Assembly (NCBI RefSeq): GCF_033153115.1
Contig: NW_026889800.1
Coordinates: forward strand, 2,852,001 to 2,916,000
Length of the DNA: 64,000 nucleotides
Reading direction: 5' to 3'
DNA from: Saccostrea echinata
Lineage: Eukaryota
This document shows positions 27,157 to 43,400 of the stretch, one piece after another. Under the pieces are notes generated by a model. That model was not told the DNA's origin and searched no databases. It worked only from the letters and a program-made list of their open reading frames with translations. The translations under genes were made by a program, and so were the position numbers. Every line of letters begins with the position of its first letter. Position 1 is the stretch's first letter.

Positions 27157-28197
27157 TTAAGATAGAATACTGATAAAGATATCTTATCCAAGGTCTATGG
27201 AGATGATTCTAATCAGGGGCTAATGACAGCAATATTTCATAGCTGAAATGTTCAATCATTTTATGCTGTCCAGCATTGAAGAAAATATTTTGGAAAAGTT
27301 GGATATTCATAGTATATGTAGTTCTGATAAAGTAAAAAATCTATTTGGAAACAGGAAAACGGGAATACTTATAAACTATATAAGATATTTAGCCTAAGAA
27401 CAAAGCTACCTTGATTTTTTAACAAAGAAAATCATTTGATATTAAAAGTATTTTTATCTTGTTGTTTTTTTTTTTAAATATATGTTCTCAATGCAAATTC
27501 TTCTATTATTGTTTTTTTTACCTGGGGAGGGGGAGGGAAAGGGACAGGGGAATGAGTTGAGGGTTAAGATGCGGCAACTAAGTTATAAACCAATTTCAGG
27601 AATTCTCATTTAAAAAACAAGAATGGATAATGAATGAGCATACTGTTTGAAAGCATCATTACATCATGGTCAATGTGTTTTTCGCTCCACAAAGAATTGA
27701 ATTTAATTGCTTTTAAATTTCTTACGATTTTTATCAATTAATTATTTCCACAATATTTCTGGAAGGTGTAAATTATACGATGTTATTTAATACTTCCTCT
27801 CTCTCTCTCTCTCTCCCTCTCTCTCTCTCTCTAGCGATATCAGTAGAAAATTAAACTCTTCTAGGAAAATTTATGTTCATCAAATAAATGATATATTTAG
27901 TGAATAAATTACTACTGTCATCAATATCTGCAACTTATCGTCCCATATACAAACGCTATCCAATGTATGTTGTTAACATTTTTAACATCTTCACAGAGAG
28001 CTTTTTTATATCTTCAGTAATTTTTCCACAAACACTTATACACTCTGTTTTTGATTATGTATAAAATAAATTAAAAACACTTGATTTAATATTCATAATT
28101 TTTCAACAATCAGTCGAAGATGTACTCTTTACAGCATGTTGAAACTTTCACCAAATTTCAATCAATATATTCAGTCAAAAGTGTGAATAAAATACAC

Positions 28198-29858
28198 TCA
28201 TGGCATTGGGTTAGAAATAGGTGATCCAGAAATGATTGGCAATGAAGTTGGAGTAGTACATCCAGCTCCGGTCTGATCAAATCCGTATACAGGTACTGAA
28301 GCACACGCCGTCCGGATTTCTGTGGTGAGATGATCTATACTGTGATGGCCGACTTCATGAATATCTGTGCTACAGTTTAATCTGTCGATCATCTTAGTCT
28401 GTAAAAGATATTAATACTGTAATATTTATAGTATATAGATATCTGAGTGCGATCTACTGATTTAGTCATATCAGTTTGAAATAAGACTGGAAACCTATTA
28501 ACAAAAATAAGATTTTTTTTTTTGATTTCGAGTATTTCAAAAAACAACTATAGCTGATTTTTTTGATATGCTTACTCGAGGAGTACAATATATAACATAC
28601 CTATAAATAAACACTATTTGCTTCATTATATGCTCCAATGATAAAATGATATGAGCTCGTTTAACAAACCTTGAAATCTTTCTTGGTTGCTTACATTTGC
28701 TGAAATCACCAAAGAGGCAGGAAAAGAAGCAATTGAATGAATGACAAAAATGAACACATCCAATATCTTAGTAATTTCCTTTTTAATTTTGGTCCATGTG
28801 AAAAAAGGTCAATGAATATTCATACAAATTGTGAGACCGTTATTTTCGCATTAAAATGTCTACAGATATTTGTGTTTAACCGATCATGACATGTGGCACG
28901 GTGACCGGTCGACGGGGGATTCTCGCTTCTTCAGGCACCTGGTCCCACTTCTGTTTCCAAAACTCTACGTTTGCTCTAATCACAATTCGTATTGCTTAAT
29001 TGGACTTTGAGCACGAATACTGCCCTTTGTCTTCACATTTCGTGTCTGATTTCCAGCATGTTTGATTTCAGCCAATCAGAAAGGTTTCAAAAGAAGGATA
29101 TGCTAATACAAAATCTAGTAGACAAGATATGGTAGCTGTGTTTTAACAATAACATTTAAAGATTTTAGTAGAGTACACTAAAAAATAGAAAAATGCAGTA
29201 ATACAAAGGAAAGTACCTCAAGAGCTGGCCTCAGAGCATCATCAAAAGAATCCTGAGATTCCTGGTGATTCATGTGATACTCATAACATCCGGTTCCGGG
29301 CCGTAAAATGATGGCTTTGTGCTACAAACATTTGTTAATATTTACAGTTCAGAAGTAATACCTTATATAAAATTTCCTGTCGGAGAACAATAATCTAAAA
29401 CATGAGGGGATATACACTTTTAAAATACGTAAAACGTGTTCATAAAAGTTCATTGATTCATAGTTTAGTCTAAATTGTGAATATTTTCAATTGATTATTA
29501 GTAAAAGTCAATACTAATGTGTTACTCATTTTTTCAGTAAACATTGCCTTCTAGAAAAGCATGTTTTTAAATATGTGTAATCTTAAAATATCAAGATATT
29601 ACAAATATTTATTACAATGTACTCACGTGTTTCCTGTCATACAGAACTTGTTCACAAAGAACATAGTTCACCTAGGAATAATCAAGAGCAATAACATTCT
29701 ATAATTGTGAGTGTTTTTAAAAGCAAAGGTTTTATGCATTATCTATTTAATTTTAAAACATGTTCCACTTCCTTTTATTTAATATGAAACATTGAATATA
29801 CTATAATATTGTAAACCCTTACCGCAAGCAGTAGTGCGAGTGCTGTCAATGTCTGCAT
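28198..29858 (-). CDS. Small secreted His-rich BRICHOS-like protein, paralogue A (4 exons, 128 aa)
   Basis: Exons 29858-29823, 29671-29627, 29321-29217 and 28398-28198, all GT-AG and phase 0: MQTLTALALLLA|VNYVLCEQVLYDRKH|HKAIILRPGTGCYEYHMNHQESQDSFDDALRPALE|TKMIDRLNCSTDIHEVGHHSIDHLTTEIRTACASVPVYGFDQTGAGCTTPTSLPIISGSPISNPMP*. Paralogue B has identical exon sizes. The gene model is strong; the BRICHOS call is an inference. Confidence 0.88.
28885..29045 (+). mobile_element. Naiad-type 3' end fragment in intron 3 of paralogue A
   Basis: GGTGACCGGTCGACGGGGGATTCTCGCTTCTTCAGGCACCTGGTCCCAC is a degenerate copy of the 3' motif. Confidence 0.65.
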
Positions 29859-29895
29859 TTTGTCAAAGTGAGGTAACGATGAAATGATATGCTAA

Positions 29896-30026
29896 TTTTA
29901 TAATCAGATAGTCTGTGAGAGCAAAGGGTATCACAAGAAATTGATAAGACGCTTGGTTCTGTCTTAAAAACTGAAGCAATATCGTGATTGGTTATTAAAC
30001 ACAATTAGTTCCTTAAATCACCAATG
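29896..30026 (-). promoter_or_regulatory. Proximal promoter of paralogue A (TATA, GATA and CCAAT motifs)
   Basis: TATAAAA on the - strand at 29896-29902. TGATAAGA (~29942), ATCGTGAT and CACCAAT are conserved in the same order upstream of paralogue B. Confidence 0.65.
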
Positions 30027-30479
30027 TGATCCATTACCAGACTTGTATAATTTTCATTGATTATATTCTTTATAACTTTTGTTTTGTGTTCTGGTCTCAA
30101 GACCATGCACTGGGATCAGACTTAAGTCAAAATTGCCATTTTAAAAATCTTATTTTTATTTCATACATGGTGTTATTATTGGAATATTTGGAGCAAAGAA
30201 AATAATTTCAGTCTGTACAATATATAATAAAAGCAAAAACATGGTTGTTTCATTATCATAATAATTTCAAATTTTTTTTTTTGATAATTTCAAAATTTGA
30301 TTCATCTGTTTTAAGTTGGAGTCCGAGGCCTTAACTATACCAATTAGTCCAGATTACAATTGTATTGTATGAAATTACTAGGATGCTATTGCCTTCTTTA
30401 CATGGTGATCATATCTCCTTTTGAAATAGGGGTATAAATAATATTTACTGATCGAATGGACATTGTAGAATTTTTAATC

Positions 30480-32235
30480 TTTATCATAAAAATGTCATTC
30501 TTGCATTCCGCCTTTAATCCGGTTGACTTCTACACCCAGCGTTTCCTGCGGATGTTCCCATACTGTTGGTTCCAAACTTTTCAATTATAAACAAATCTTA
30601 CAGTGTCTTGGAATTGAACATCTTAAACAAAGTACTCTTAAGTGTACTTTTCTTCTTTTTTTTCAACAGCAGTCCCACTGGACACGTCATTACCGGTGAT
30701 GTTAATATCCTTAAAAATGACGCCTAAAAGCAATCACCTTAAAAGGTCCTAAATAAAGAGATTCTTGATCTTTCAGTTGGCGACAGAGCTTAATTTCTAC
30801 TCTGAAATCTGTCTTTGTCAAAAATTATGCACGACTTTGGGCGGAGTGTGAGGGGTAGGACTTGAACACTTTTAAAGAACGGATTGGGCGTTTTAGAAAA
30901 GTGTTTGGGAATCGTGTTTGAGGGTTGGGAGGCAATATGCGAACGATCCGTTTTTGCTAGATCGGAAATGAAAATGGAATTGAAAGAATGCATAAACAAT
31001 ATGTTATGGTTCCAGCAGGCATGGCTTGTAACATTAGTGTTTGAAAGGCTCATTATTGTAACTGTATTTTAGAACTTTGCTTAATTCTACATCTGGAAAT
31101 CCAACTTATATTCACAACTATCTTTCTGAGAATGAAATTCTTCAAAGTCGCATTTCAATCCTTGATACTTTCAACATTCAAATCAACCAAGGTGGAATTG
31201 ATCTACCCTACTATACTGGACTCCGCATTTTCATAAAAAGTCTTTCAAACAAAGATACATTTCAGTGTCCAGCGAATGCTCTACCAAACCCTTTCTTTAC
31301 TCCTCACAAAAAATATTAAGTGCAGCAAAGGAGACATTTCAGACGTACTGTGCTACAGCAAATTCTAGAGATGGTGTAAATCAGATGTGGATTTTCAAGA
31401 ACTTCAAAGAACTTTTGGATAATTCAAAATCACCGAACTTTTTTGAAAAGTCATTAACATAAAAACGCACGACTTTTCTATACTTTATACAACCATTCCT
31501 CACAATAAACTAAGAACTATAATTTTTAGTATAATAAAACAACAGCTTTTTTCAATTGAAAACGATTTCGGAATATTTTCAAGTCTTGTGATTGGTCATC
31601 GACAAAATATGAATGTTAAAAATCACTCTGATTATCAAAAAAGTTACTATGATTATCACAAAAGTACTCCGAAGTTGATATCATAAGGATGCTGGATTTT
31701 CTCATTGACAAGAAATTGATTGTACTTAGAGCGAGCATGCTCTTATCGAAAAAGTTTGGAGACGTAAACATCATATGCAGGTGATAGCGGAATATAACTA
31801 CAAAATAAGGAATGTTGACGATAGAAACGCTGAAATCATCTTGTTTGACATACAAATTAGTTGTTAGTTGGCATCCTCCCATAGTCAGTAAAATATCCAA
31901 ATATGAAACAGATGTTGCAGACTCCATGGTGTCTTCTATTTCGAGTTCACTTGGATATATCGAGTCGACATATGAATGAAAGTAACTAGGTATCGTTAAT
32001 TGATTAAAAAGTCGTCGATATATCAAAATGTGAAGTGTTCTCTTCTTATCATGTAGAAGTTTTGAAATAAATTTTGCTTAGGAATATAAAAACAGGTCGG
32101 CTTATAATGGAACACAATGAGTGTCCAATGCAATTACTACAGTTTTTTGGAAGAACTGGTCTCCGAATTTATCAATGAGGAACTTCAGCATCCTTTTAAT
32201 AACAACTTCACAGTACTTGTGTGTAGAAGTCTGGT
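30480..32235. mobile_element. Decayed Naiad-type Penelope-like element: + strand linker and RT N-half, followed by an inverted RT segment
   Basis: Plus strand: PTGHVITGDVNIL, KGPK*RE, GVNQMWIFKN, DFSILYTTIPH. Minus strand 32235-31715: decayed GTxC.P, YLDI and DDFSVSIVNIPY region. Confidence 0.8.
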
Positions 32236-33049
32236 GGAACCTGGCTACAGCAGTAAAGACATTTATAAAATCCCTCTCTAATTCTGTGTTTATTGTTGTT
32301 GGTGATGTTATCTATCCTTTTTATCCATTCCTTTTACTTTTTATTTTGGTTTTGTCTTCTTAGGCGTGTAAAATAGGGAAACAATTATTCTGAATGAAAT
32401 ACTAATAATCACTTGTCTTCAATAAACTTCAATATTAACACGAATGCTTTGGTCTATATTTTACAGAGACATGACAAAGAAATCCTTGATAGAGATATCT
32501 AATCCAGAGTTCCTTAAATGTCAACACTAACTACGAATTTTAAGTACATTATTTGAAATAAATAGACTAAGAGAACTAAGATCATTTATTTCAACAATTT
32601 ATTAAGTAACTCTGCCAAATAGGATTTCTTTGAAGATCTTTTTATTTTAGTTAGTTATTTATTCATTTATATTTTTATTTACCTACTTTATATTTTTTAA
32701 TTTAATTTTTTTTTTTAAATTTTATGTCTCTTTTTATTCGATTTGTTTAAAATTTGAAAATAACGATCAGATATCATCTGATAAATCTAGTGAAGTATAT
32801 GTAAACACGCCAAAAAACTGATCCCTTGGAAACACAAGACGTTAACTTCCCCTGTCGACCGGTCACACCCGCTGTGAGCCTGTATGTCTTAAGAGGAGTT
32901 GTTAGGTGCCCAAAATGTCTTAATGTACATATTTTTTTTCCTACAGAACGTGATATATGTTTCTTTACTTCTGGAAAAGCAAAATTAAAGTGTTTCTCTT
33001 TTCTCCTTTGACAAAATCATTATATCACATTTAAGGAATAAACATGAAA

Positions 33050-33965
33050 TATTGAAATGACGAACAGTTTTCAAGCTCATAGGCCATTGAAATAATAAAA
33101 ATCGGGAAGAAAGCAAACACGGACCTCCAAAAACATCATAGGCCGGATCAGATGCCATGGAAGAGTAAGCATCCCCTACCAACCGGTCACATCGGCCTTG
33201 TGCTCCTGGTCATGATCGGGAAATAACGGAAAAATCCGTAGAAATGTCAGTGTGTAAATAATGGATTAACAATTAGTACGGAAAAAAAGTCAGTCAAAAT
33301 TTGAATAAATGATAGATTATATTTGCTGATGAGGTCATTGTATCGGCGGTAGAACTTGCCAAATGATGACTTCAAAAAAGACTGTTGATATTCTTTTTTC
33401 ATTAAGGTTTTGTTTAATAGCTTGCCTCGTTTTAAGAATTGGTCGTACGTAGAGCATGCTATTGCGTATTGAATCAACTGGGAGACATAAACCCCGTATT
33501 GTTGTGATAAGGGTATACTGCTACATAATTAAGGGAAGTTGACGACAGAAAAGTTGAAGTCATCATATTTTTCTTTAAGTTATGTTGTTAGGTTACCATT
33601 AACGTTTTTTTCCAGTAAAATATCCAAATATAAGACAGATGTGTCAGAAAGTGGTGTCTTTTATTTCAAGTTCATTAAGATTTATCGATCTACATATGAA
33701 TGGAAGTACTTTATTGTTAATTGATAATACGTCTTCGATATATCTAAATCCCGAGTTGAAGGCCACAGCATGAATGGAAGTACTTTATTGTTAATTGATA
33801 ATACGTCTTCGATATATCTTAATCACGAGTTGAAGGCCACAGCAAGTGTTTTCTTCTCCTCATGTAGCAGTTTTTTAAAAAATAAATTCGGCTACATATG
33901 AATACAAAAATAGGTCTGCTAAAAATGGCGCGCATTTTTTTTTACCCGTGGGAATTCCAACAGAT
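33050..33965 (-). mobile_element. Naiad-type Penelope-like RT C-half and 3' end, with an internal ~74-bp tandem duplication
   Basis: GIPTG..CAPFLADLFLYSY and IQYAIACSTYDQFLKRG..SSFGKFYRRYNDL; ~33696-33769 is duplicated at ~33770-33843. Confidence 0.8.
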
Positions 33966-34524
33966 ATCTTCACAGATATTGTCATTCGGAAACTAAAGCA
34001 TATTTTTAATATCAACTTCAGAGCGCTTTTGTATAGAATAGGATTTTTTTTAAACAAATTAATTTTGCAAATAAAGCAAAATGACAAGTTTCATTTTTAT
34101 TGAAAAAGCAACTATCTATGATGTCAAAAAGCCTGAATTTTAATTCATGGCCAATGGTTGTTTAAAGTATTGAAAAGTCGTACGTTTTGATATTATTGAT
34201 TTTGGTAAAATTTTGTGATATTTATTATTCCAAGTTGAAATAAATTTATTATTTCTTTTTTATTTATTTTTTTAATTTCATTTTTTAAATCTATTTTATT
34301 TTTTGCTACAAAATATGTCTCGGTCATGTTTATTTAAAAGAATTCTCTGATTTTTCTTTCTTTTAACTATTTAGCGTTGTAATTGATCTTTTTATATGCA
34401 TTGTAGAACATGTACACTTCAAGACTTTTCTATGGTTACAATTCAGGATATTACAATTAACTGTCTACTAATAAATTTCAATATGAAATCTCTCTCTCTC
34501 TCTCGGTGTCTGTGTGTGTGTGTG

Positions 34525-34555
<31 letters not shown>

Positions 34556-34802
34556 TCAAGAAAACGTCATTATTTACAGTTATATTATAGATTCAATACT
34601 GAAAGCAGCGTCATAACAACGTTTTAATAACAGTGTGGATTTTTTTTAAAGACAATCAGATTTTTAAAAAGTCATTTAATATTCAAAAACTATGATGCAT
34701 TCAATTTTATTCAAAACAATTGCATATGTATCATATATAGCAAGTTGAAAACTTTATTAACTCCCTCTCAATATATCCAGTCAAAACTGACTTTAAACAC
34801 AC

Positions 34803-36061
34803 TTATGGCATTGGATTAGAAATAGATGAGCCGGACATGGTTGGCAATTCAGTTGTTGTAGCACATCCGGATCCCGTCTGATCGAATCTGTATACAGGTA
34901 CTGAAGCACAAGCGTTCCGGATTTCTGTGGTGAGATGATCTATACTGTGATGGCCGACTTCATGGATATCTGTGCTGCAGTTTAATTTCTCGATCATCTT
35001 AATCTGGAAGAGATATCAATAATGATAATATGACATAATATTTGTGTTCAAATTCTTTTAATCATTTCAAGCTTAAATAAGAAAACTTTATTAAGAAGTT
35101 TCTTATTGGGAAAGTAATTACAGAAGCTTTAGAACTGATTGAAAGATAAGGACACATTTGATTGTTTTTTTTTTAATATTTATGGTGGAAAATTAATTGA
35201 TGACAGATTAGAGTGAGGGATGTATTCATATTTTGTCTTCAATTTAATTTTTCATCAAATGGGCTCTTTCTTCAATTTTATCAAATAGAAGTTATCATTG
35301 AATCAAGAAAATCTGACAGACAAAAATTTCGATTGTGTTTAAAAATACATATTCCTTGTTTTGCAGAATGCAGCGCAAAATAGAGGATGTAGTAAGAATA
35401 GTAAAGTACCTCAAGATCTGGTCTAAGTGCATCATCAAAAGAATCCTGAGATTCCTGGTGATTCATGTGATACTCATAACATCCGGTTCCGGGACGGTAT
35501 ATGATGGCTTTGTGCTAAAACATATTTTGTTAATATTTACATTTCTGAAACATATTCTTTTAAATTTCATCATGAAGACATAGGAGAATATATAATCTAT
35601 GTTCAGTAATAAAAGTTCTAAAATTTTATTGATAAAATTAATAATTTTTCAGCCTAATTGCTTCAATTGGCTGTGAATATATGACAATTCATATTGATAT
35701 TGTGGTTCAATTAGATGTATCATTTGTAAAATGAACATAAAGATTTTACATGACTTAAAAGTATTCTCAATGAAATGATATGATAAATATCTACATGATA
35801 CTTACATGCTTCTGATCGTACATAACTTGTTCACAGAGAACATAGTTCATCTAAAAAGAATAGGATAATCAGTTATTACAAAAATAAGTTTCTACAAGCA
35901 GCAATATGATTTTTCAAGAGAGAAAAAAACATTTTGCTATATTAGTACAAAAATATAAGAACTTTCTATAATAAAATTTAAAAAAAGAAGAAGATACAAA
36001 TAAGTACAATTCTGAAAAGACTTACCGCTAGGAAGAAAACGAAAACCGCGAATGACTGCAT
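34803..36061 (-). CDS. Small secreted His-rich BRICHOS-like protein, paralogue B (4 exons, 128 aa)
   Basis: Exons 36061-36026, 35850-35806, 35514-35410 and 35003-34803: MQSFAVFVFFLA|MNYVLCEQVMYDQKH|HKAIIYRPGTGCYEYHMNHQESQDSFDDALRPDLE|IKMIEKLNCSTDIHEVGHHSIDHLTTEIRNACASVPVYRFDQTGSGCATTTELPTMSGSSISNPMP*. Confidence 0.88.
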
Positions 36062-36098
36062 TTTGTCAAACTGAGGTATGGATGAAGTGCTATGTCTA

Positions 36099-36231
36099 CT
36101 TTATAATCAGATTTTCTGTGAGAACATGATGTATCTCAGACAAATGATAAGATGTTTAAGGCAGGCCTTGAGAGCTTAAGCATTATCGTGATCAGTGTTA
36201 TTTAACAAAATTAGTATTAAAGGTCACCAAT
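36099..36231 (-). promoter_or_regulatory. Proximal promoter of paralogue B
   Basis: TATAAAG on the - strand at 36099-36105; TGATAAGA, ATCGTGAT and CACCAAT match paralogue A. Confidence 0.65.
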
Positions 36232-40400: not shown

Positions 40401-43400
40401 CTTTACGGCATAGATATAAACAAGAACTGATCTGAAATAGTACACCATATATTGCACAGAGAAGTGTGAAATTGTTGAATATTTTCCTTCTGTTTTTAAT
40501 TTTTTTTTTTAATTTTTATTTTACTTCAATGACTGTACAGTACAAAAAAAGATAAAAAAGATAAAAATCTAGTCTATTTTTATGAAACTTACTCCTTATT
40601 CTCTAGCACACACCATCTTTTAACATAAGGAGTAACATATTTAACCAGGAGCGCTTCCTCTAGTTGCTGCAGAAAGTTCGTTTCCATTTGATAAAATGAT
40701 GCTAAGGTCATACCAAGATGAAAGGTGATGACAACTTTATTAGGGTCAAATCTATCAACCCTGACCAGGGCTGGATCTGATGACGTCAGAAAGGGATTAC
40801 CATTATCATGTGCCATGATTTTGAAAACGTATTTAGAATCAACCAATTTCCCGTTAGCTTTTACTTTTCCTAAAATAAAATGGCAGGTATTATAAAAAAA
40901 TTATGCAAATGTTAAATTGCCGATAATGATAAAAATGAAACTATAAATAACTCGATAAGCTTTTACCAAGTGGAGACACGACAAAGGGTAGATCTTTTGT
41001 TTCCAGCTCAAAATTTATGGCTGCGTTTTTTCCTAAATCTGCGTCCGTTGCTGTAATTTTTGTTACTTCAGCATCACAGAGTTTAACGGAGGAGACTTCA
41101 GAGTTATAAAACACAGGGGAGAAAACAGGCCTGTTATCATTGACGTCTTGGATCTGGACAGTTACGTTTGCTGAGCTGGATAATGATGGTACACCTGTGT
41201 CTCTGACTATAACTGTGAATGTCAACTCGTCATAGGCTTCCCTGTCTATTCTACGTTTGAGGAAAATGTCTCCTGTATTTCCATAGACACCAAAATAATA
41301 ATCAGCGAGTAAGCCATTTTTGTTCGAAATGTCAAGTTCATATTTAATTATAGCGTTTATTCCTACATCTCGGTCGGTGGCTCCAGTCGTGTGAATTTTA
41401 CTGTTTACAGCAAGATTTTCAAAAATAGCCGTTGAAAATTCTTGTCGTCTGAATATTGGTGGATTGTCATTAATGTCGTCAATTTTAATTTTTACGATTA
41501 CATCAGAAAATAGGGTGGGTGTTCCACTGTCCTTAGCTCTCATCAGTAAGGAATATTCATCATAAGCTTCCCGATCCACTACCCCATTGGTTAAGATCTC
41601 ACCAGTCATTTCTTTTATATCGAACACTCCCGTGTTTCCTTTCCAAATTGTAGCTATACTATATTTCAGTTTAGCATTTTTACCAATATCTTTATCTGTG
41701 GCTTCAATGTTCCCGACAAGGGTATTTTGTCTCACGTGTTCTTGTATGCTGAATTCGTATACAGATTTCGATAAAACGGGAGGCGAATCATTTTCATCTC
41801 CTACATTTACCACTGCGGTCACAGTAGACGACCTTGGAGGGACACCATTGTCGGTGACCTTTACAATCAACTCATATCTGTCTTTATACTCTCTGTCTAA
41901 TGTTGTTGCTAATTGCACGACTCCCGTATTTGATTCAATCTTGAAGATTGAGTTAAGGTTCCCCAAAATGATTTCATAGTTAAGTTTTCCAAATTTCTCT
42001 GTATCAGCATCGTATGCACTAATATTGAAAATAACTGAGTGTTCCGGGGCGTTTTCAGATACAGTGGTGACGTAGCTCCCAGTTATGACTGGGTCGTGGT
42101 CATTGACGTCAGATACAATTATTTTTAGTGACAGGGTTCCCGTCATACGTGGGTTTCCGCCATCAGTGGCAGTTATAACCATTTCATATCTGGAAATAAA
42201 ATTTAAAAACTTATCGTATACCTATCATGTCTGTAAGAGAATCAACATTGCGGTTGTTTTAAATATCCCGAACAGTGATAATCCTACATTTCAAACTATC
42301 ATCATTTGTACTTTTTTTCTTTAAAACAAATTGTTGTCTATCTCAAGGCTAAATATTTTTTTTTCAAAATGAAATAGGAGTAAACTACTAGTACTTTATG
42401 TCAATAAAACTAACTTGTCTTTGGTTTCCCTGTCTAGATCACCTGTAACAGTTACAGTACCATTGACTGGGTTCACCTGGAAGGGCACTAAAGAGGCGGA
42501 GAAATATGTAATCTTATTGTTATCATTAAGTGAGGAATCGGCGTCTTCAGCAAACACACTGATAACTGACTGACCAATCAGAGCACTTTCTGAAACTCGC
42601 TCTTGTAAGACAGTTTGTAATAACTCTGGTGCATTGTCATTTTTGTCCAATATTTTAACAATTACCGAACACTCTGTAGACAATGATGGAGAACCAAGAT
42701 CAAAGGCTTCAATTGCCATAACAACTGTTTTAATATCTTCATAATCTATAGGCGTAACGACGGATATAATGCCTTTAGATATATCGATGTGAAATTTAGA
42801 ATCGTCATTCCCCGATACAATCCTATAGTGGACTTGTCCATTGATTCCTTCGTCATCATCAACAGCGGAAATACTACCGACTGTCGTCCCTGTCGCTGTA
42901 TTCTCCGAAACCAGTAACCTGTAAACAAACACAGACATGTACCAAAAACAAACAGTAGAATCATATAATCAGACAAACACAAGTTTACTACGTATCGTAT
43001 GGTTTGATATCGATATTTTTAGTTTTATTAGGAATATTTTTTTCTCGAAATTTGCTCGAGCAATTGAAGAACGTTCTTCTTATTCTTGTTTGTTTTTTTT
43101 TTAAATATTCATCTTGCAGAGAATTATCAATTATATGACCAACTTAAAAGAAAAAAGAGATTTACTGATAACTGGATTGTTTAAACACAGGGTGTTCGTT
43201 AATGTCCTCTACAGTCACAGAGACGGTGGCAGTGGAACTCTTCTCTCCATCAGAAGCCAAGACATACAGGATAAAAGTAGGACTGGTCTCCCTATCAGCA
43301 GGTGCCCGGAGGATGATTTTTCCACTTTTAGGATTGAGCACAAAATGTGGATAAAGTTCCAGGAAGGAATATGTGACTGTATCGTTATCGCTATCTGTAG

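What the first reader, a model, noticed from the sequence alone, without database searches (positions are those of the whole stretch)
28198..36061. Tandem pair of hidden 4-exon genes encoding a minimal, secreted, His-rich BRICHOS-like protein
Seen: two intact 128-aa genes with identical exon sizes (36/45/105/201 nt), a hydrophobic N-terminus with a likely cleavage at VLC|EQ, and the pattern YD24-x14-C39Y...HL-x3-I-x3-C94-x2-VPVY. Both also keep a second Cys pair (C71, C109), an N-glycosylation site (NCS), 8 His and a Pro/Ser/Thr tail. Known: BRICHOS domains (proSP-C, Bri2/ITM2B, gastrokines, annelid arenicin/alvinellacin precursors) have a conserved Asp ~16 residues before a Cys, and a second Cys ~60 residues later in an I..LC...P.Y context. 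They are anti-amyloid chaperones that normally sit between a linker and a beta-prone C-terminal client peptide. Inference: here the domain would start right after the signal peptide, with no dibasic site and no beta-hairpin client. That would make it a stand-alone secreted BRICHOS-like chaperone or metal-binding protein (mucus, gut, shell or immunity), possibly an undescribed bivalve family.
Basis: partly seen in the sequence, partly recalled or inferred. Interest (0 to 1): 0.8.

Follow-up and report, generated by a model that had tools for sequence, protein, structure and literature searches.

The report
Two small secreted BRICHOS-type oyster genes
Two neighbouring oyster genes encode small secreted proteins that are very divergent, stripped-down relatives of the BRICHOS anti-aggregation chaperone domain, from a mollusc family that carries only uncharacterized or hypothetical labels.

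Summary
Two minus-strand genes have four exons of 36/45/105/201 nt, GT-AG introns in phase 0, and each encodes 128 aa. They are not hidden. Gene A is exactly RefSeq XP_061195514.1 of Saccostrea echinata, and gene B exons 2-4 are XP_061195515.1; both are labelled "uncharacterized". Intron-less contigs in 4 of 4 public runs carry gene A's predicted junctions.

The BRICHOS reading is supported by sequence. The window's own proteins miss Pfam. A family profile finds only 30 representatives among 1.84 billion proteins; every hit that carries a source name is a mollusc. Of 17 members, 8 match PF04089 in one register, and two Solemya proteins exceed the curated cut-off. hhalign links the oyster profile to one of those two at 96.5%. 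The Asp and the first Cys are invariant; the second Cys is kept in every row that reaches it.

The architecture is unusual. About 84 residues start right after the signal peptide, with no convertase site and no conserved C-terminal peptide. Function is inferred.

The parts
29823..29858 (-). Gene A exon 1 (12 codons, start of the signal peptide)
   Evidence: It sits at residues 1-12 of XP_061195514.1. The junction to exon 2 is seen in one contig of run X1 with only 25 letters on this side, plus a matching 8-letter loose end in X4.
29627..29671 (-). Gene A exon 2 (15 codons: end of the signal peptide, likely cleavage after VLC, then the strand ending in invariant Asp24)
   Evidence: The junction 29321>29627 is seen in 2 of 4 runs.
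29217..29321 (-). Gene A exon 3 (35 codons: strand with Cys39, His43/His46, first helix)
   Evidence: The junction 28398>29217 is seen in 4 of 4 runs.
28198..28398 (-). Gene A exon 4 (66 codons plus stop: His/Asp cluster 76-85, Cys94, VPVY strand, Pro/Ser/Thr tail with Cys109)
28062..28197 (-). Gene A 3' untranslated region, as far as contigs reach
   Evidence: Contig pieces end at 28062 (X4), 28115 (X2), 28140 (X3) and 28141 (X1). Contigs cannot fix the true end.
29859..29954 (-). Gene A 5' flank conserved with gene B. It holds a TATA-like box (29896-29902) and a GATA-like site (29942-29948).
   Evidence: Repeat D2 is 72% identical over 29802-29954 versus 36005-36157. The upstream 200 nt give 0.78 matches against 0.61 when shuffled, and both motifs sit at identical spacing in A and B. 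The motif names are recalled; function is not tested.
36026..36061 (-). Gene B exon 1 (12 codons, hydrophobic). It is missing from the RefSeq model.
   Evidence: ATG, 12 codons, GT donor. It is not contained in P0001. It is paralogous to gene A exon 1 within repeat D2. No RNA evidence was obtained.
35806..35850 (-). Gene B exon 2
   Evidence: It is residues 1-15 of XP_061195515.1.
35410..35514 (-). Gene B exon 3
34803..35003 (-). Gene B exon 4 plus stop
36062..36157 (-). Gene B 5' flank with a TATA-like box (36099-36105) and a GATA-like site (36145-36151)

Best explanation
The two genes are a tandem pair of paralogues in the oyster Saccostrea echinata. Transcription is shown for gene A only. 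Each encodes a protein of about 12 kDa.

Each protein has a cleavable signal peptide, followed at once by a very divergent, shortened BRICHOS domain of about 84 residues, and then a short Pro/Ser/Thr tail. The domain keeps the family's hallmark Asp and its Cys pair. It lacks the usual N-terminal strands, the convertase site and the aggregation-prone C-terminal peptide that BRICHOS domains normally chaperone within the same chain.

The most likely mode of action is therefore an ATP-independent extracellular chaperone that works on other secreted proteins, as gastrokine-type secreted BRICHOS proteins may do. This step is inferred. A further inferred step is that the conserved His/Asp cluster next to the predicted disulfide gives pH or metal control.

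Shown here: gene structure, splicing of gene A, purifying selection, homology to BRICHOS by sequence, and restriction of the family to molluscs. Inferred: fold, disulfide, secretion, chaperone activity, metal or pH switching, and tissue.
For: - Gene models and identity to RefSeq proteins.
- Spliced contigs for gene A. Intron 3 is skipped in 4 of 4 runs, intron 2 in 2 of 4 and intron 1 in 1 of 4, with no depth in the intron bins. All runs come from one study and at most two samples.
- The genome has only these two loci and no intron-less copy.
- dN/dS between A and B is 0.24, and the introns are unalignable.
- The family profile finds 30 representatives at E<=0.001 among 1,835,955,588 proteins. 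All named members are molluscs.
- Pfam BRICHOS PF04089 is hit by 8 of 17 members. P0020 scores 34.4 bits and P0022 27.9 bits against a cut-off of 25. P0007 scores 20.7 bits (E 5e-4); P0005, P0009, P0008, P0006 and P0015 score 14.5-17.5 bits. Each of the other nine families is hit by one member only.
- Four of the six single-domain hits (P0005, P0007, P0009, P0015) start 3-6 residues before the invariant Asp. P0006 and P0008 start downstream of the Asp (profile positions 20 and 18). All six end at the conserved Tyr at profile position 90 (ranges read against the sequences).
- hhalign of the oyster/ark-shell profile A3 against P0020 gives 96.5% probability, E 7.9e-10 and 81 columns, with Asp on Asp and Cys on Cys.
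- Atlas: the nearest named clusters are GKN1, GKN2 and SP-C-like at 0.87/0.87/0.79. With the mature domain alone they score 0.85/0.85/0.84. All ten best named hits are in the BRICHOS/OAF clan.
- Asp24, Cys39 and His43 are invariant in 17 of 17 rows. Cys94 is present in every row that reaches it.
- A hydrophobic N-terminus (10-residue Kyte-Doolittle mean 2.5-3.4) is present in 12 of 13 members checked. The exception is the exon-1-less RefSeq model of gene B.
Against: - The window's own proteins give no Pfam hit at E<=10, whether searched exon by exon or as P0001 and P0014. The same is true of P0002, P0003, P0004, P0011, P0016, P0024 and P0025.
- No PDB chain, including solved BRICHOS entries, is matched by sequence or profile. 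The best E-values are about 0.5, to unrelated proteins.
- hhalign of the family profile against the one canonical BRICHOS exon that Pfam finds in this genome is not significant (probability 0.08%, E 0.64).
- Atlas scores are below 0.9, which the tool itself calls leads only.
- The runs' RNA label is the tool's guess. The exon 1-2 junction rests on 25 letters in one contig.
- No expression evidence exists for gene B, and no tissue information at all.
- Chaperone activity, secretion and metal binding are untested.
Confidence: 0.75

Rival explanations
1. The protein is primarily a secreted histidine-based metal-binding protein. It would buffer, carry or withhold Zn, Cu or Ni from microbes, and uses a BRICHOS-derived scaffold with no chaperone role.
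For: There are eight His in 110 mature residues and the pI is 5.3-5.7. H27, H28, H43, H46, H80, H81, D84 and H85 are invariant in the 11 oyster/ark-shell rows. H43 is invariant in all 17 rows. By geometry (inference), His43 and Asn45 share a strand face with Cys39 and would face the helix carrying His81, Asp84 and His85.
Against: Most of these His are not kept in the divergent members from Solemya and Gigantopelta. There is no match to any metal-binding family. No structure and no assay exist. This reading does not exclude the best explanation.
Confidence: 0.25
2. It is a fold unrelated to BRICHOS. The Asp and two-Cys pattern and the weak Pfam hits would be convergence or chance.
For: There is no direct Pfam hit for the window proteins. 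No PDB hit exists. hhalign to a canonical oyster BRICHOS exon is negative. The domain is some 25-65 residues shorter than the human BRICHOS cores quoted in PMC9714404.
Against: Eight of 17 members hit the same Pfam family, and all six single-domain hits end at the same profile position. Two members exceed the curated cut-off. The link from the oyster profile to those two is E 1.4e-11 and 8e-11 library-wide and 96.5% by hhalign. The atlas neighbours are all in the BRICHOS/OAF clan.
Confidence: 0.07
3. It is a pro-peptide precursor of the polychaete BRICHOS antimicrobial-peptide kind, and the C-terminal tail is released as the active product.
For: BRICHOS precursors in polychaetes carry C-terminal antimicrobial peptides (passages of PMC9756803 and PMC10745061). 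The oyster proteins have a tail of about 26 residues with one Cys.
Against: There is no dibasic site after the domain. The only dibasic pair in gene A lies at residues 25-26, inside the domain, and gene B has none. The tail is Pro/Ser/Thr-rich, not cationic, and variable in length. It is absent or only 2-5 residues long in the Tegillarca, Dreissena, Gigantopelta and Solemya members.
Confidence: 0.05
4. It is a zincin-type metalloprotease remnant, read from the H-E-x-x-H string at residues 76-80.
For: The five-residue string is present in both window proteins. The zincin motif itself is recalled.
Against: His76 is Thr in the three type-2 oyster proteins, and Val or Gln in Ruditapes and Dreissena. 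The protein is far too small, and no peptidase family matches.
Confidence: 0.01

Closest known systems
Gastrokines (GKN1/2/3), the secreted vertebrate BRICHOS proteins
   Same: They share a signal peptide followed directly by a BRICHOS domain. They are soluble secreted products rather than type II membrane proteins. They are the nearest named clusters in the atlas search (0.87 with 179-180 of 256 features for the whole protein; 0.85 for residues 19-105).
   Different: No sequence-level hit to gastrokines was obtained. The GKN2 BRICHOS core is quoted as residues 20-151, about 132 aa (PMC9714404, passage), against about 84 aa here. Gastrokines keep a C-terminal segment after the domain. The His/Asp cluster is specific to the mollusc family.
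Pfam BRICHOS PF04089 (proSP-C, Bri2/ITM2B, chondromodulin/tenomodulin, BRICD5, OAF)
   Same: The conserved Asp sits 15 residues before the first Cys. A second Cys lies 55 residues later, in front of a hydrophobic Pro-x-Tyr strand. There is an N-terminal hydrophobic targeting segment. Relatives match the profile over positions 4-20 to 90 of 91.
   Different: Only five residues precede the Asp in the mature chain. The N-terminal strands counted in the conserved core by PMC9714404 therefore cannot be present. There is no linker, no furin-type site and no beta-hairpin or amyloid-prone mature peptide. The window proteins fall below Pfam detection.
Polychaete BRICHOS antimicrobial-peptide precursors (arenicin, alvinellacin, capitellacin, nicomicin, HfBRI)
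   Same: They are lophotrochozoan secreted BRICHOS proteins with an N-terminal signal (passages).
   Different: Those carry a cleavable C-terminal antimicrobial peptide, which is their reason for being. The mollusc family has none, and its review literature describes BRICHOS-AMPs as found only in polychaetes.
Solemya velum tandem proteins KAL5019866.1 and KAL5020026.1 (P0020, P0022)
   Same: They are members of the same mollusc family (E 1.4e-11 and 8e-11). They carry the same Asp, Cys-Tyr-x-x-His and Cys motifs.
   Different: They have two domains in one chain (216-218 aa). They pass the Pfam BRICHOS cut-off. They lack most of the oyster His cluster and the second Cys pair.

Membership tests
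BRICHOS (PF04089) | Direct match of the window's own proteins to the Pfam profile. This is a detection criterion, not a biological feature. | tested here: not met
   There is no hit at E<=10 for exons 3 and 4 of both genes, for P0001 or for P0014. A six-frame search of the genome with PF04089 at E<=1 finds one other locus and not this one.
BRICHOS (PF04089) | Significant sequence relationship to the family through intermediates | tested here: met
   Eight of 17 family members hit PF04089, 2 of them above the 25-bit cut-off. Profile A3 reaches P0020 at E 1.4e-11 and P0022 at E 8e-11 among 1.84 billion proteins. hhalign gives 96.5%. The regions overlap: P0020 residues 28-114 for the family profile against 38-106 for Pfam.
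BRICHOS (PF04089) | [quoted passage not shown] | tested here: met
   Asp24 is invariant in 17 of 17 aligned members. By my reading of the ranges, it falls at about profile position 10 in the four hits whose aligned range includes it (P0005, P0007, P0009, P0015). Its position on a strand is inferred.
BRICHOS (PF04089) | Cys pair forming the disulfide between beta-strand 4 and alpha-helix 2 (feature iv) | tested here: inconclusive
   Both Cys are conserved: Cys39 in 17 of 17 rows, and Cys94 in every row that reaches it. A crude hydrophobic-moment scan gives strand-like periodicity around 36-44 and helix-like periodicity around 70-90. The bond itself needs a structure or mass spectrometry.
BRICHOS (PF04089) | Fold: central beta-sheet flanked by two helices | not testable with these tools
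The atlas holds no model of this protein.
BRICHOS (PF04089) | N-terminal signal peptide or signal anchor (feature i) | tested here: met
   A hydrophobic stretch starts at residues 3-8 in 12 of 13 members checked. Val at -3 and Cys or Ala at -1 stand before a conserved Glu-Gln in the eight oyster proteins. This is heuristic only; no SignalP tool was available, and the -3/-1 rule is recalled.
BRICHOS (PF04089) | Convertase site followed by a C-terminal beta-prone mature peptide (features ii and iii) | tested here: not met
   There is no dibasic pair after the domain in either protein. The tail is Pro/Ser/Thr-rich, and is missing or 2-5 residues long in the Tegillarca, Dreissena, Gigantopelta and Solemya members.
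BRICHOS (PF04089) | N-terminal strands of the conserved core (beta-1', beta-2', beta-1 in PMC9714404) | tested here: not met
   Only five residues lie between the predicted cleavage site and Asp24. In other members the preceding segment is a low-complexity Pro/Thr linker. This is read from sequence, not from a structure.
Gastrokine subfamily | Detectable sequence similarity to GKN proteins | tested here: not met
   There is only embedding similarity of 0.85-0.87. No vertebrate protein is among the 30 profile hits that could be named.
Zincin metalloproteases | Conserved H-E-x-x-H | tested here: not met
   The first His is replaced in 5 of the 11 to 17 aligned members.

The most novel reading that the evidence does not exclude
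Molluscs carry the smallest natural BRICHOS domain, at about 84 residues. It has lost both its N-terminal strands and its in-chain client. It works as a free extracellular chaperone whose activity is switched by pH or by Zn/Cu through a His/Asp cluster packed against the conserved disulfide. In Solemya the same unit is doubled in one chain.
Probability: 0.3. Interest if true: 0.65.

Novelty: new variant of a known kind. Interest (0 to 1): 0.5.

Why it matters
BRICHOS domains are studied as anti-amyloid chaperones. In the passages I read, they are described as intramolecular chaperones tied to a client peptide in the same precursor.

A natural, conserved family consisting of signal peptide plus a shortened BRICHOS domain and nothing else would show that the domain can be kept by selection without a client in the same chain. 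It would also offer a very small scaffold for structural and anti-aggregation work.

For oyster biology, it puts a testable label on a set of "uncharacterized" genes in commercially important species: Crassostrea, Ostrea, Saccostrea, Ruditapes, Tegillarca and Dreissena.

Tried and rejected
- Exon-by-exon Pfam scans gave nothing.
- The exon-4 word search found one protein.
- PDB sequence and profile searches gave only chance-level hits to calmodulin, galactocerebrosidase, uL4 and an antibody chain.
- hhalign of the family profile against the single canonical BRICHOS exon that Pfam finds in this genome (L003) was negative.
- A maximum-likelihood tree of 14 members was unresolved, with 1 of 11 inner branches well supported. 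It cannot date the A/B duplication. I left out of that tree P0011 (truncated), the two-domain proteins P0020 and P0022, and all fragments.
- From alignment A4 I left out the fragmentary or intron-read-through hits: P0010, P0012, P0013, P0017-P0019, P0021, P0023 and P0026-P0040.
- The zincin reading was rejected on conservation.
- The hydrophobic-moment scan is crude and is only consistent with the expected pattern; it is not a test.
- Literature: ten locus names, one protein accession and one locus tag gave 0 papers. "BRICHOS" with "oyster" gave 11 papers and with "mollus" gave 20, none describing this family by title or by the passages I read. One search was badly framed, because min_terms 2 let through papers without BRICHOS, and it gave nothing usable.
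- Supplementary tables were not opened. Gene lists with these loci, and hence tissue or response data, may sit there.
- Earlier notes of this scan mention other BRICHOS-type genes elsewhere in this genome. I did not test them.


Full report
WHAT IS THERE. The window is G000:C51:2852001-2916000 of a 923-Mb, 425-contig assembly. Two genes lie on the minus strand. Gene A has exons at 29823-29858, 29627-29671, 29217-29321 and 28198-28398. Gene B has exons at 36026-36061, 35806-35850, 35410-35514 and 34803-35003. In both, the exons measure 36/45/105/201 nt, every intron starts GT and ends AG, all junctions are in phase 0, and the products are 128 aa. My first guess for exon 3 was off by two bases and was corrected.

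NOT HIDDEN. Searching exon 4 alone returned one protein, P0001. It is XP_061195515.1, "uncharacterized protein LOC133203749 [Saccostrea echinata]", 116 aa. It equals gene B exons 2-4 exactly and lacks exon 1. Its neighbour in the numbering, XP_061195514.1 (LOC133203748, P0014, 128 aa), equals gene A's four exon peptides in order. So the window is S. echinata and both genes are annotated, without a function. Gene B's exon 1 supplies the hydrophobic start that the 116-aa model lacks. The support for it is paralogy with gene A (repeat D2) and a GT donor. No reads support it yet.

REAL, SPLICED, UNDER SELECTION. Four public runs hold parts of gene A. They come from one study and at most two samples, are kept as contigs, and carry an RNA label that is only the tool's guess. 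Laid on 28000-30100, their contigs skip 28398>29217 in 4 of 4 runs and 29321>29627 in 2 of 4 runs. They skip 29669>29821 in 1 of 4 runs; this joint fits equally when shifted by 2, which gives the predicted 29671>29823. There is no depth in the intron bins. The last junction has only 25 letters on the exon 1 side, under the tool's 31-letter rule. An 8-letter loose end in X4 agrees with it. The genome holds no intron-less copy: searches with exon 4 and with the family profile find only these two loci, exon by exon. The intron-less contigs are therefore best read as mRNA. Between A and B, dN/dS is 0.24. The three introns align no better than shuffled sequence. The 200 nt upstream keep 0.78 matches against 0.61 for shuffles. 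Direct repeats are confined to the exons plus 6-21 flanking bases and to the 5' flank.

THE FAMILY. With P0001 as query, the word search found 13 proteins at E<=0.1 among 15 candidates, all without precomputed Pfam domains. They come from Saccostrea cucullata, Ostrea edulis, Crassostrea virginica, C. gigas, the ark shell Tegillarca granosa, and unnamed contigs. A profile of 11 members (A3) was scored against 1,835,955,588 representatives. It found 30 proteins at E<=0.001, 12 at 1e-10 and 3 at 1e-30. The named hits are Ruditapes philippinarum, Dreissena polymorpha, three proteins of the protobranch Solemya velum (two of them with two domains in tandem) and the vent snail Gigantopelta aegis. No named hit lies outside molluscs. 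In the 17-row alignment A4, Asp24, Cys39, His43 and Leu61 are invariant. Tyr40, Asn45, His46, Glu62 and Cys94 are nearly so. Cys71 and Cys109 occur only in oysters; the sequon at 70-72 is oyster-only too, but three type-1 oyster members (P0003, P0004, P0005) have Asp in place of the Asn, so it is not kept even there.

IS IT BRICHOS? Direct tests on the window's proteins fail. There was no Pfam family at E<=10 for the exons, P0001 or P0014. A PF04089 search of the whole genome at E<=1 finds one other locus and not this one. The family as a whole gives a different answer. Scanning the 17 members one by one, 8 hit PF04089, and each of the nine other families was hit by a single member at E>=0.015. 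Solemya P0020 (34.4 bits, E 2.6e-8) and P0022 (27.9 bits) exceed the curated 25-bit cut-off, each through two stretches. The single-domain hits are:
- O. edulis P0007: 20.7 bits (E 5e-4)
- C. virginica P0005: 17.5 bits
- Tegillarca P0009: 17.5 bits
- C. virginica P0008: 17.0 bits
- C. gigas P0006: 14.8 bits
- Ruditapes P0015: 14.5 bits

These hits cover profile positions 4-20 to 90 of 91. I read the ranges against the sequences. P0005, P0007, P0009 and P0015 start 3-6 residues before the invariant Asp, while P0006 and P0008 start downstream of it. All six end on the conserved Tyr of the Pro-x-Tyr strand, so they share one register. The link from the oyster proteins to the two Solemya proteins is strong: E 1.4e-11 and 8e-11 library-wide. 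hhalign gives 96.5% probability, E 7.9e-10 and 81 columns, with Asp on Asp and both Cys on Cys.

Independently, a protein-language-model atlas puts gastrokine-1, gastrokine-2 and SP-C-like BRICHOS clusters next after the protein's own cluster, which holds 118 mollusc members. The scores are 0.87 with 179-180 of 256 features. With residues 19-105 alone, the top three named clusters are again BRICHOS, at 0.84-0.85. The tool calls scores below 0.9 leads only. Against the reading: no PDB chain is reached by sequence, and hhalign to a canonical oyster BRICHOS exon is null. My initial impression that the motifs resemble proSP-C and gastrokine strings was recalled from memory and counts only as a lead.

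WHAT COULD NOT BE DONE.

HOW IT DIFFERS FROM KNOWN BRICHOS PROTEINS. Passages of PMC9714404 list five features common in the family: a signal or anchor, a convertase site, a disulfide-stabilised hairpin mature peptide, the strand-helix disulfide, and the conserved Asp. They quote human core domains of about 110-150 residues, with extra N-terminal strands in all but proSP-C. A passage of PMC10745061 states that all known BRICHOS proteins except proSP-C have a C-terminal region of high beta propensity. This family differs on each architectural point.
- The mature chain starts five residues before the Asp.
- The domain ends about 84 residues later.
- No dibasic site follows it.
- The tail is a variable Pro/Ser/Thr stretch that is missing in several members.

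Three of the five features are met at sequence level and two are not. The N-terminal strands cannot be present.

HOW IT PROBABLY WORKS. This paragraph is inference. After signal cleavage (Val at -3, Cys or Ala at -1, then a conserved Glu-Gln) the cell secretes an acidic protein of about 12 kDa (pI 5.3-5.7). With no client in the same chain, the simplest role is a chaperone that acts on other aggregation-prone secreted proteins, as the BRICHOS literature describes for the isolated domains. The oyster, ark-shell and clam members add an invariant set of His27, His28, His43, His46, His80, His81, Asp84 and His85. If Cys39 and Cys94 bond as in BRICHOS, His43 and Asn45 would face the helix turn carrying His81, Asp84 and His85. 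That would make a plausible pH or Zn/Cu switch. The conserved 5' flank carries a TATA-like box 38-44 nt upstream of the ATG and a GATA-like site 84-90 nt upstream, at identical spacing in both genes. GATA factors often drive gut expression (recalled), so digestive epithelium is a guess worth testing.

NOVELTY. None of the ten locus names, one protein accession and one locus tag searched occurs in the searchable full texts. Papers combining BRICHOS with oyster or mollusc terms are reviews of polychaete peptides, the OAF paper, and a mussel transcriptome that lists one "BRICHOS domain-containing protein" in a table. I saw only listings and the quoted passages, and no supplements. I rate the finding a new variant of a known kind. 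It is a mollusc-restricted, shortened BRICHOS family with no client in its own chain, and it is currently unlabelled in databases. Other notes of this scan report different BRICHOS-type genes elsewhere in this genome. I did not test them, and they do not overlap this locus.

VERDICT. Fold and function remain open. Interest is moderate at 0.5: a useful and somewhat surprising architecture for BRICHOS specialists, but so far a refinement of annotation without experimental or structural proof.

Noticed in passing
window 28198-29858 versus 34803-36061: Synonymous divergence between the paralogues is very uneven. pS is 0.64-0.72 in exons 1-2 and 0.23-0.24 in exons 3-4, while all introns are unalignable. 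This could reflect constraint on synonymous sites or short exon-limited gene conversion.
   Followed up: partly
window 40941-42938 (-): Two long open frames (413 and 180 aa) encode multiple cadherin repeats, with PF00028 at E 9e-63 and 4e-33. They are probably exons of a large protocadherin or FAT-like gene next to the pair.
   Followed up: partly
window 2469-2984 (-): A 171-aa open frame carries a Myb/SANT-like (MADF-type) DNA-binding domain, PF13873 at E 1e-18. It may be a domesticated or transposon-borne gene.
   Followed up: no
window 33696-33843, and about 31760-32110 versus 33500-33920: There is a 74-nt unit duplicated in tandem at 97% identity. By eye, two diverged copies of an intergenic repeat of about 300 nt lie between the two genes.
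   Followed up: no
window 27800-27835 and 34488-34556: (CT)n and (GT)n microsatellites lie just downstream of each gene's 3' end.
   Followed up: no
P0020 and P0022 (Solemya velum, not in the window): The chemosymbiotic protobranch Solemya has proteins with two of these short BRICHOS units in tandem, as well as a single-domain one (P0025).
   Followed up: partly
G000 genome-wide: S. echinata shows only the two type-1 genes. No counterpart was found of the second oyster subgroup represented by C. gigas LOC105346800, O. edulis LOC125665613 and C. virginica LOC111110511. The one weak extra hit is at C16:9414564-9414674 (E 0.74).
   Followed up: partly
window 28119-28360: Contigs of runs X2, X3 and X4 differ from the window at 2-10 places in exon 4 and the 3' UTR of gene A, while X1 is identical there. 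These are presumably alleles.
   Followed up: no
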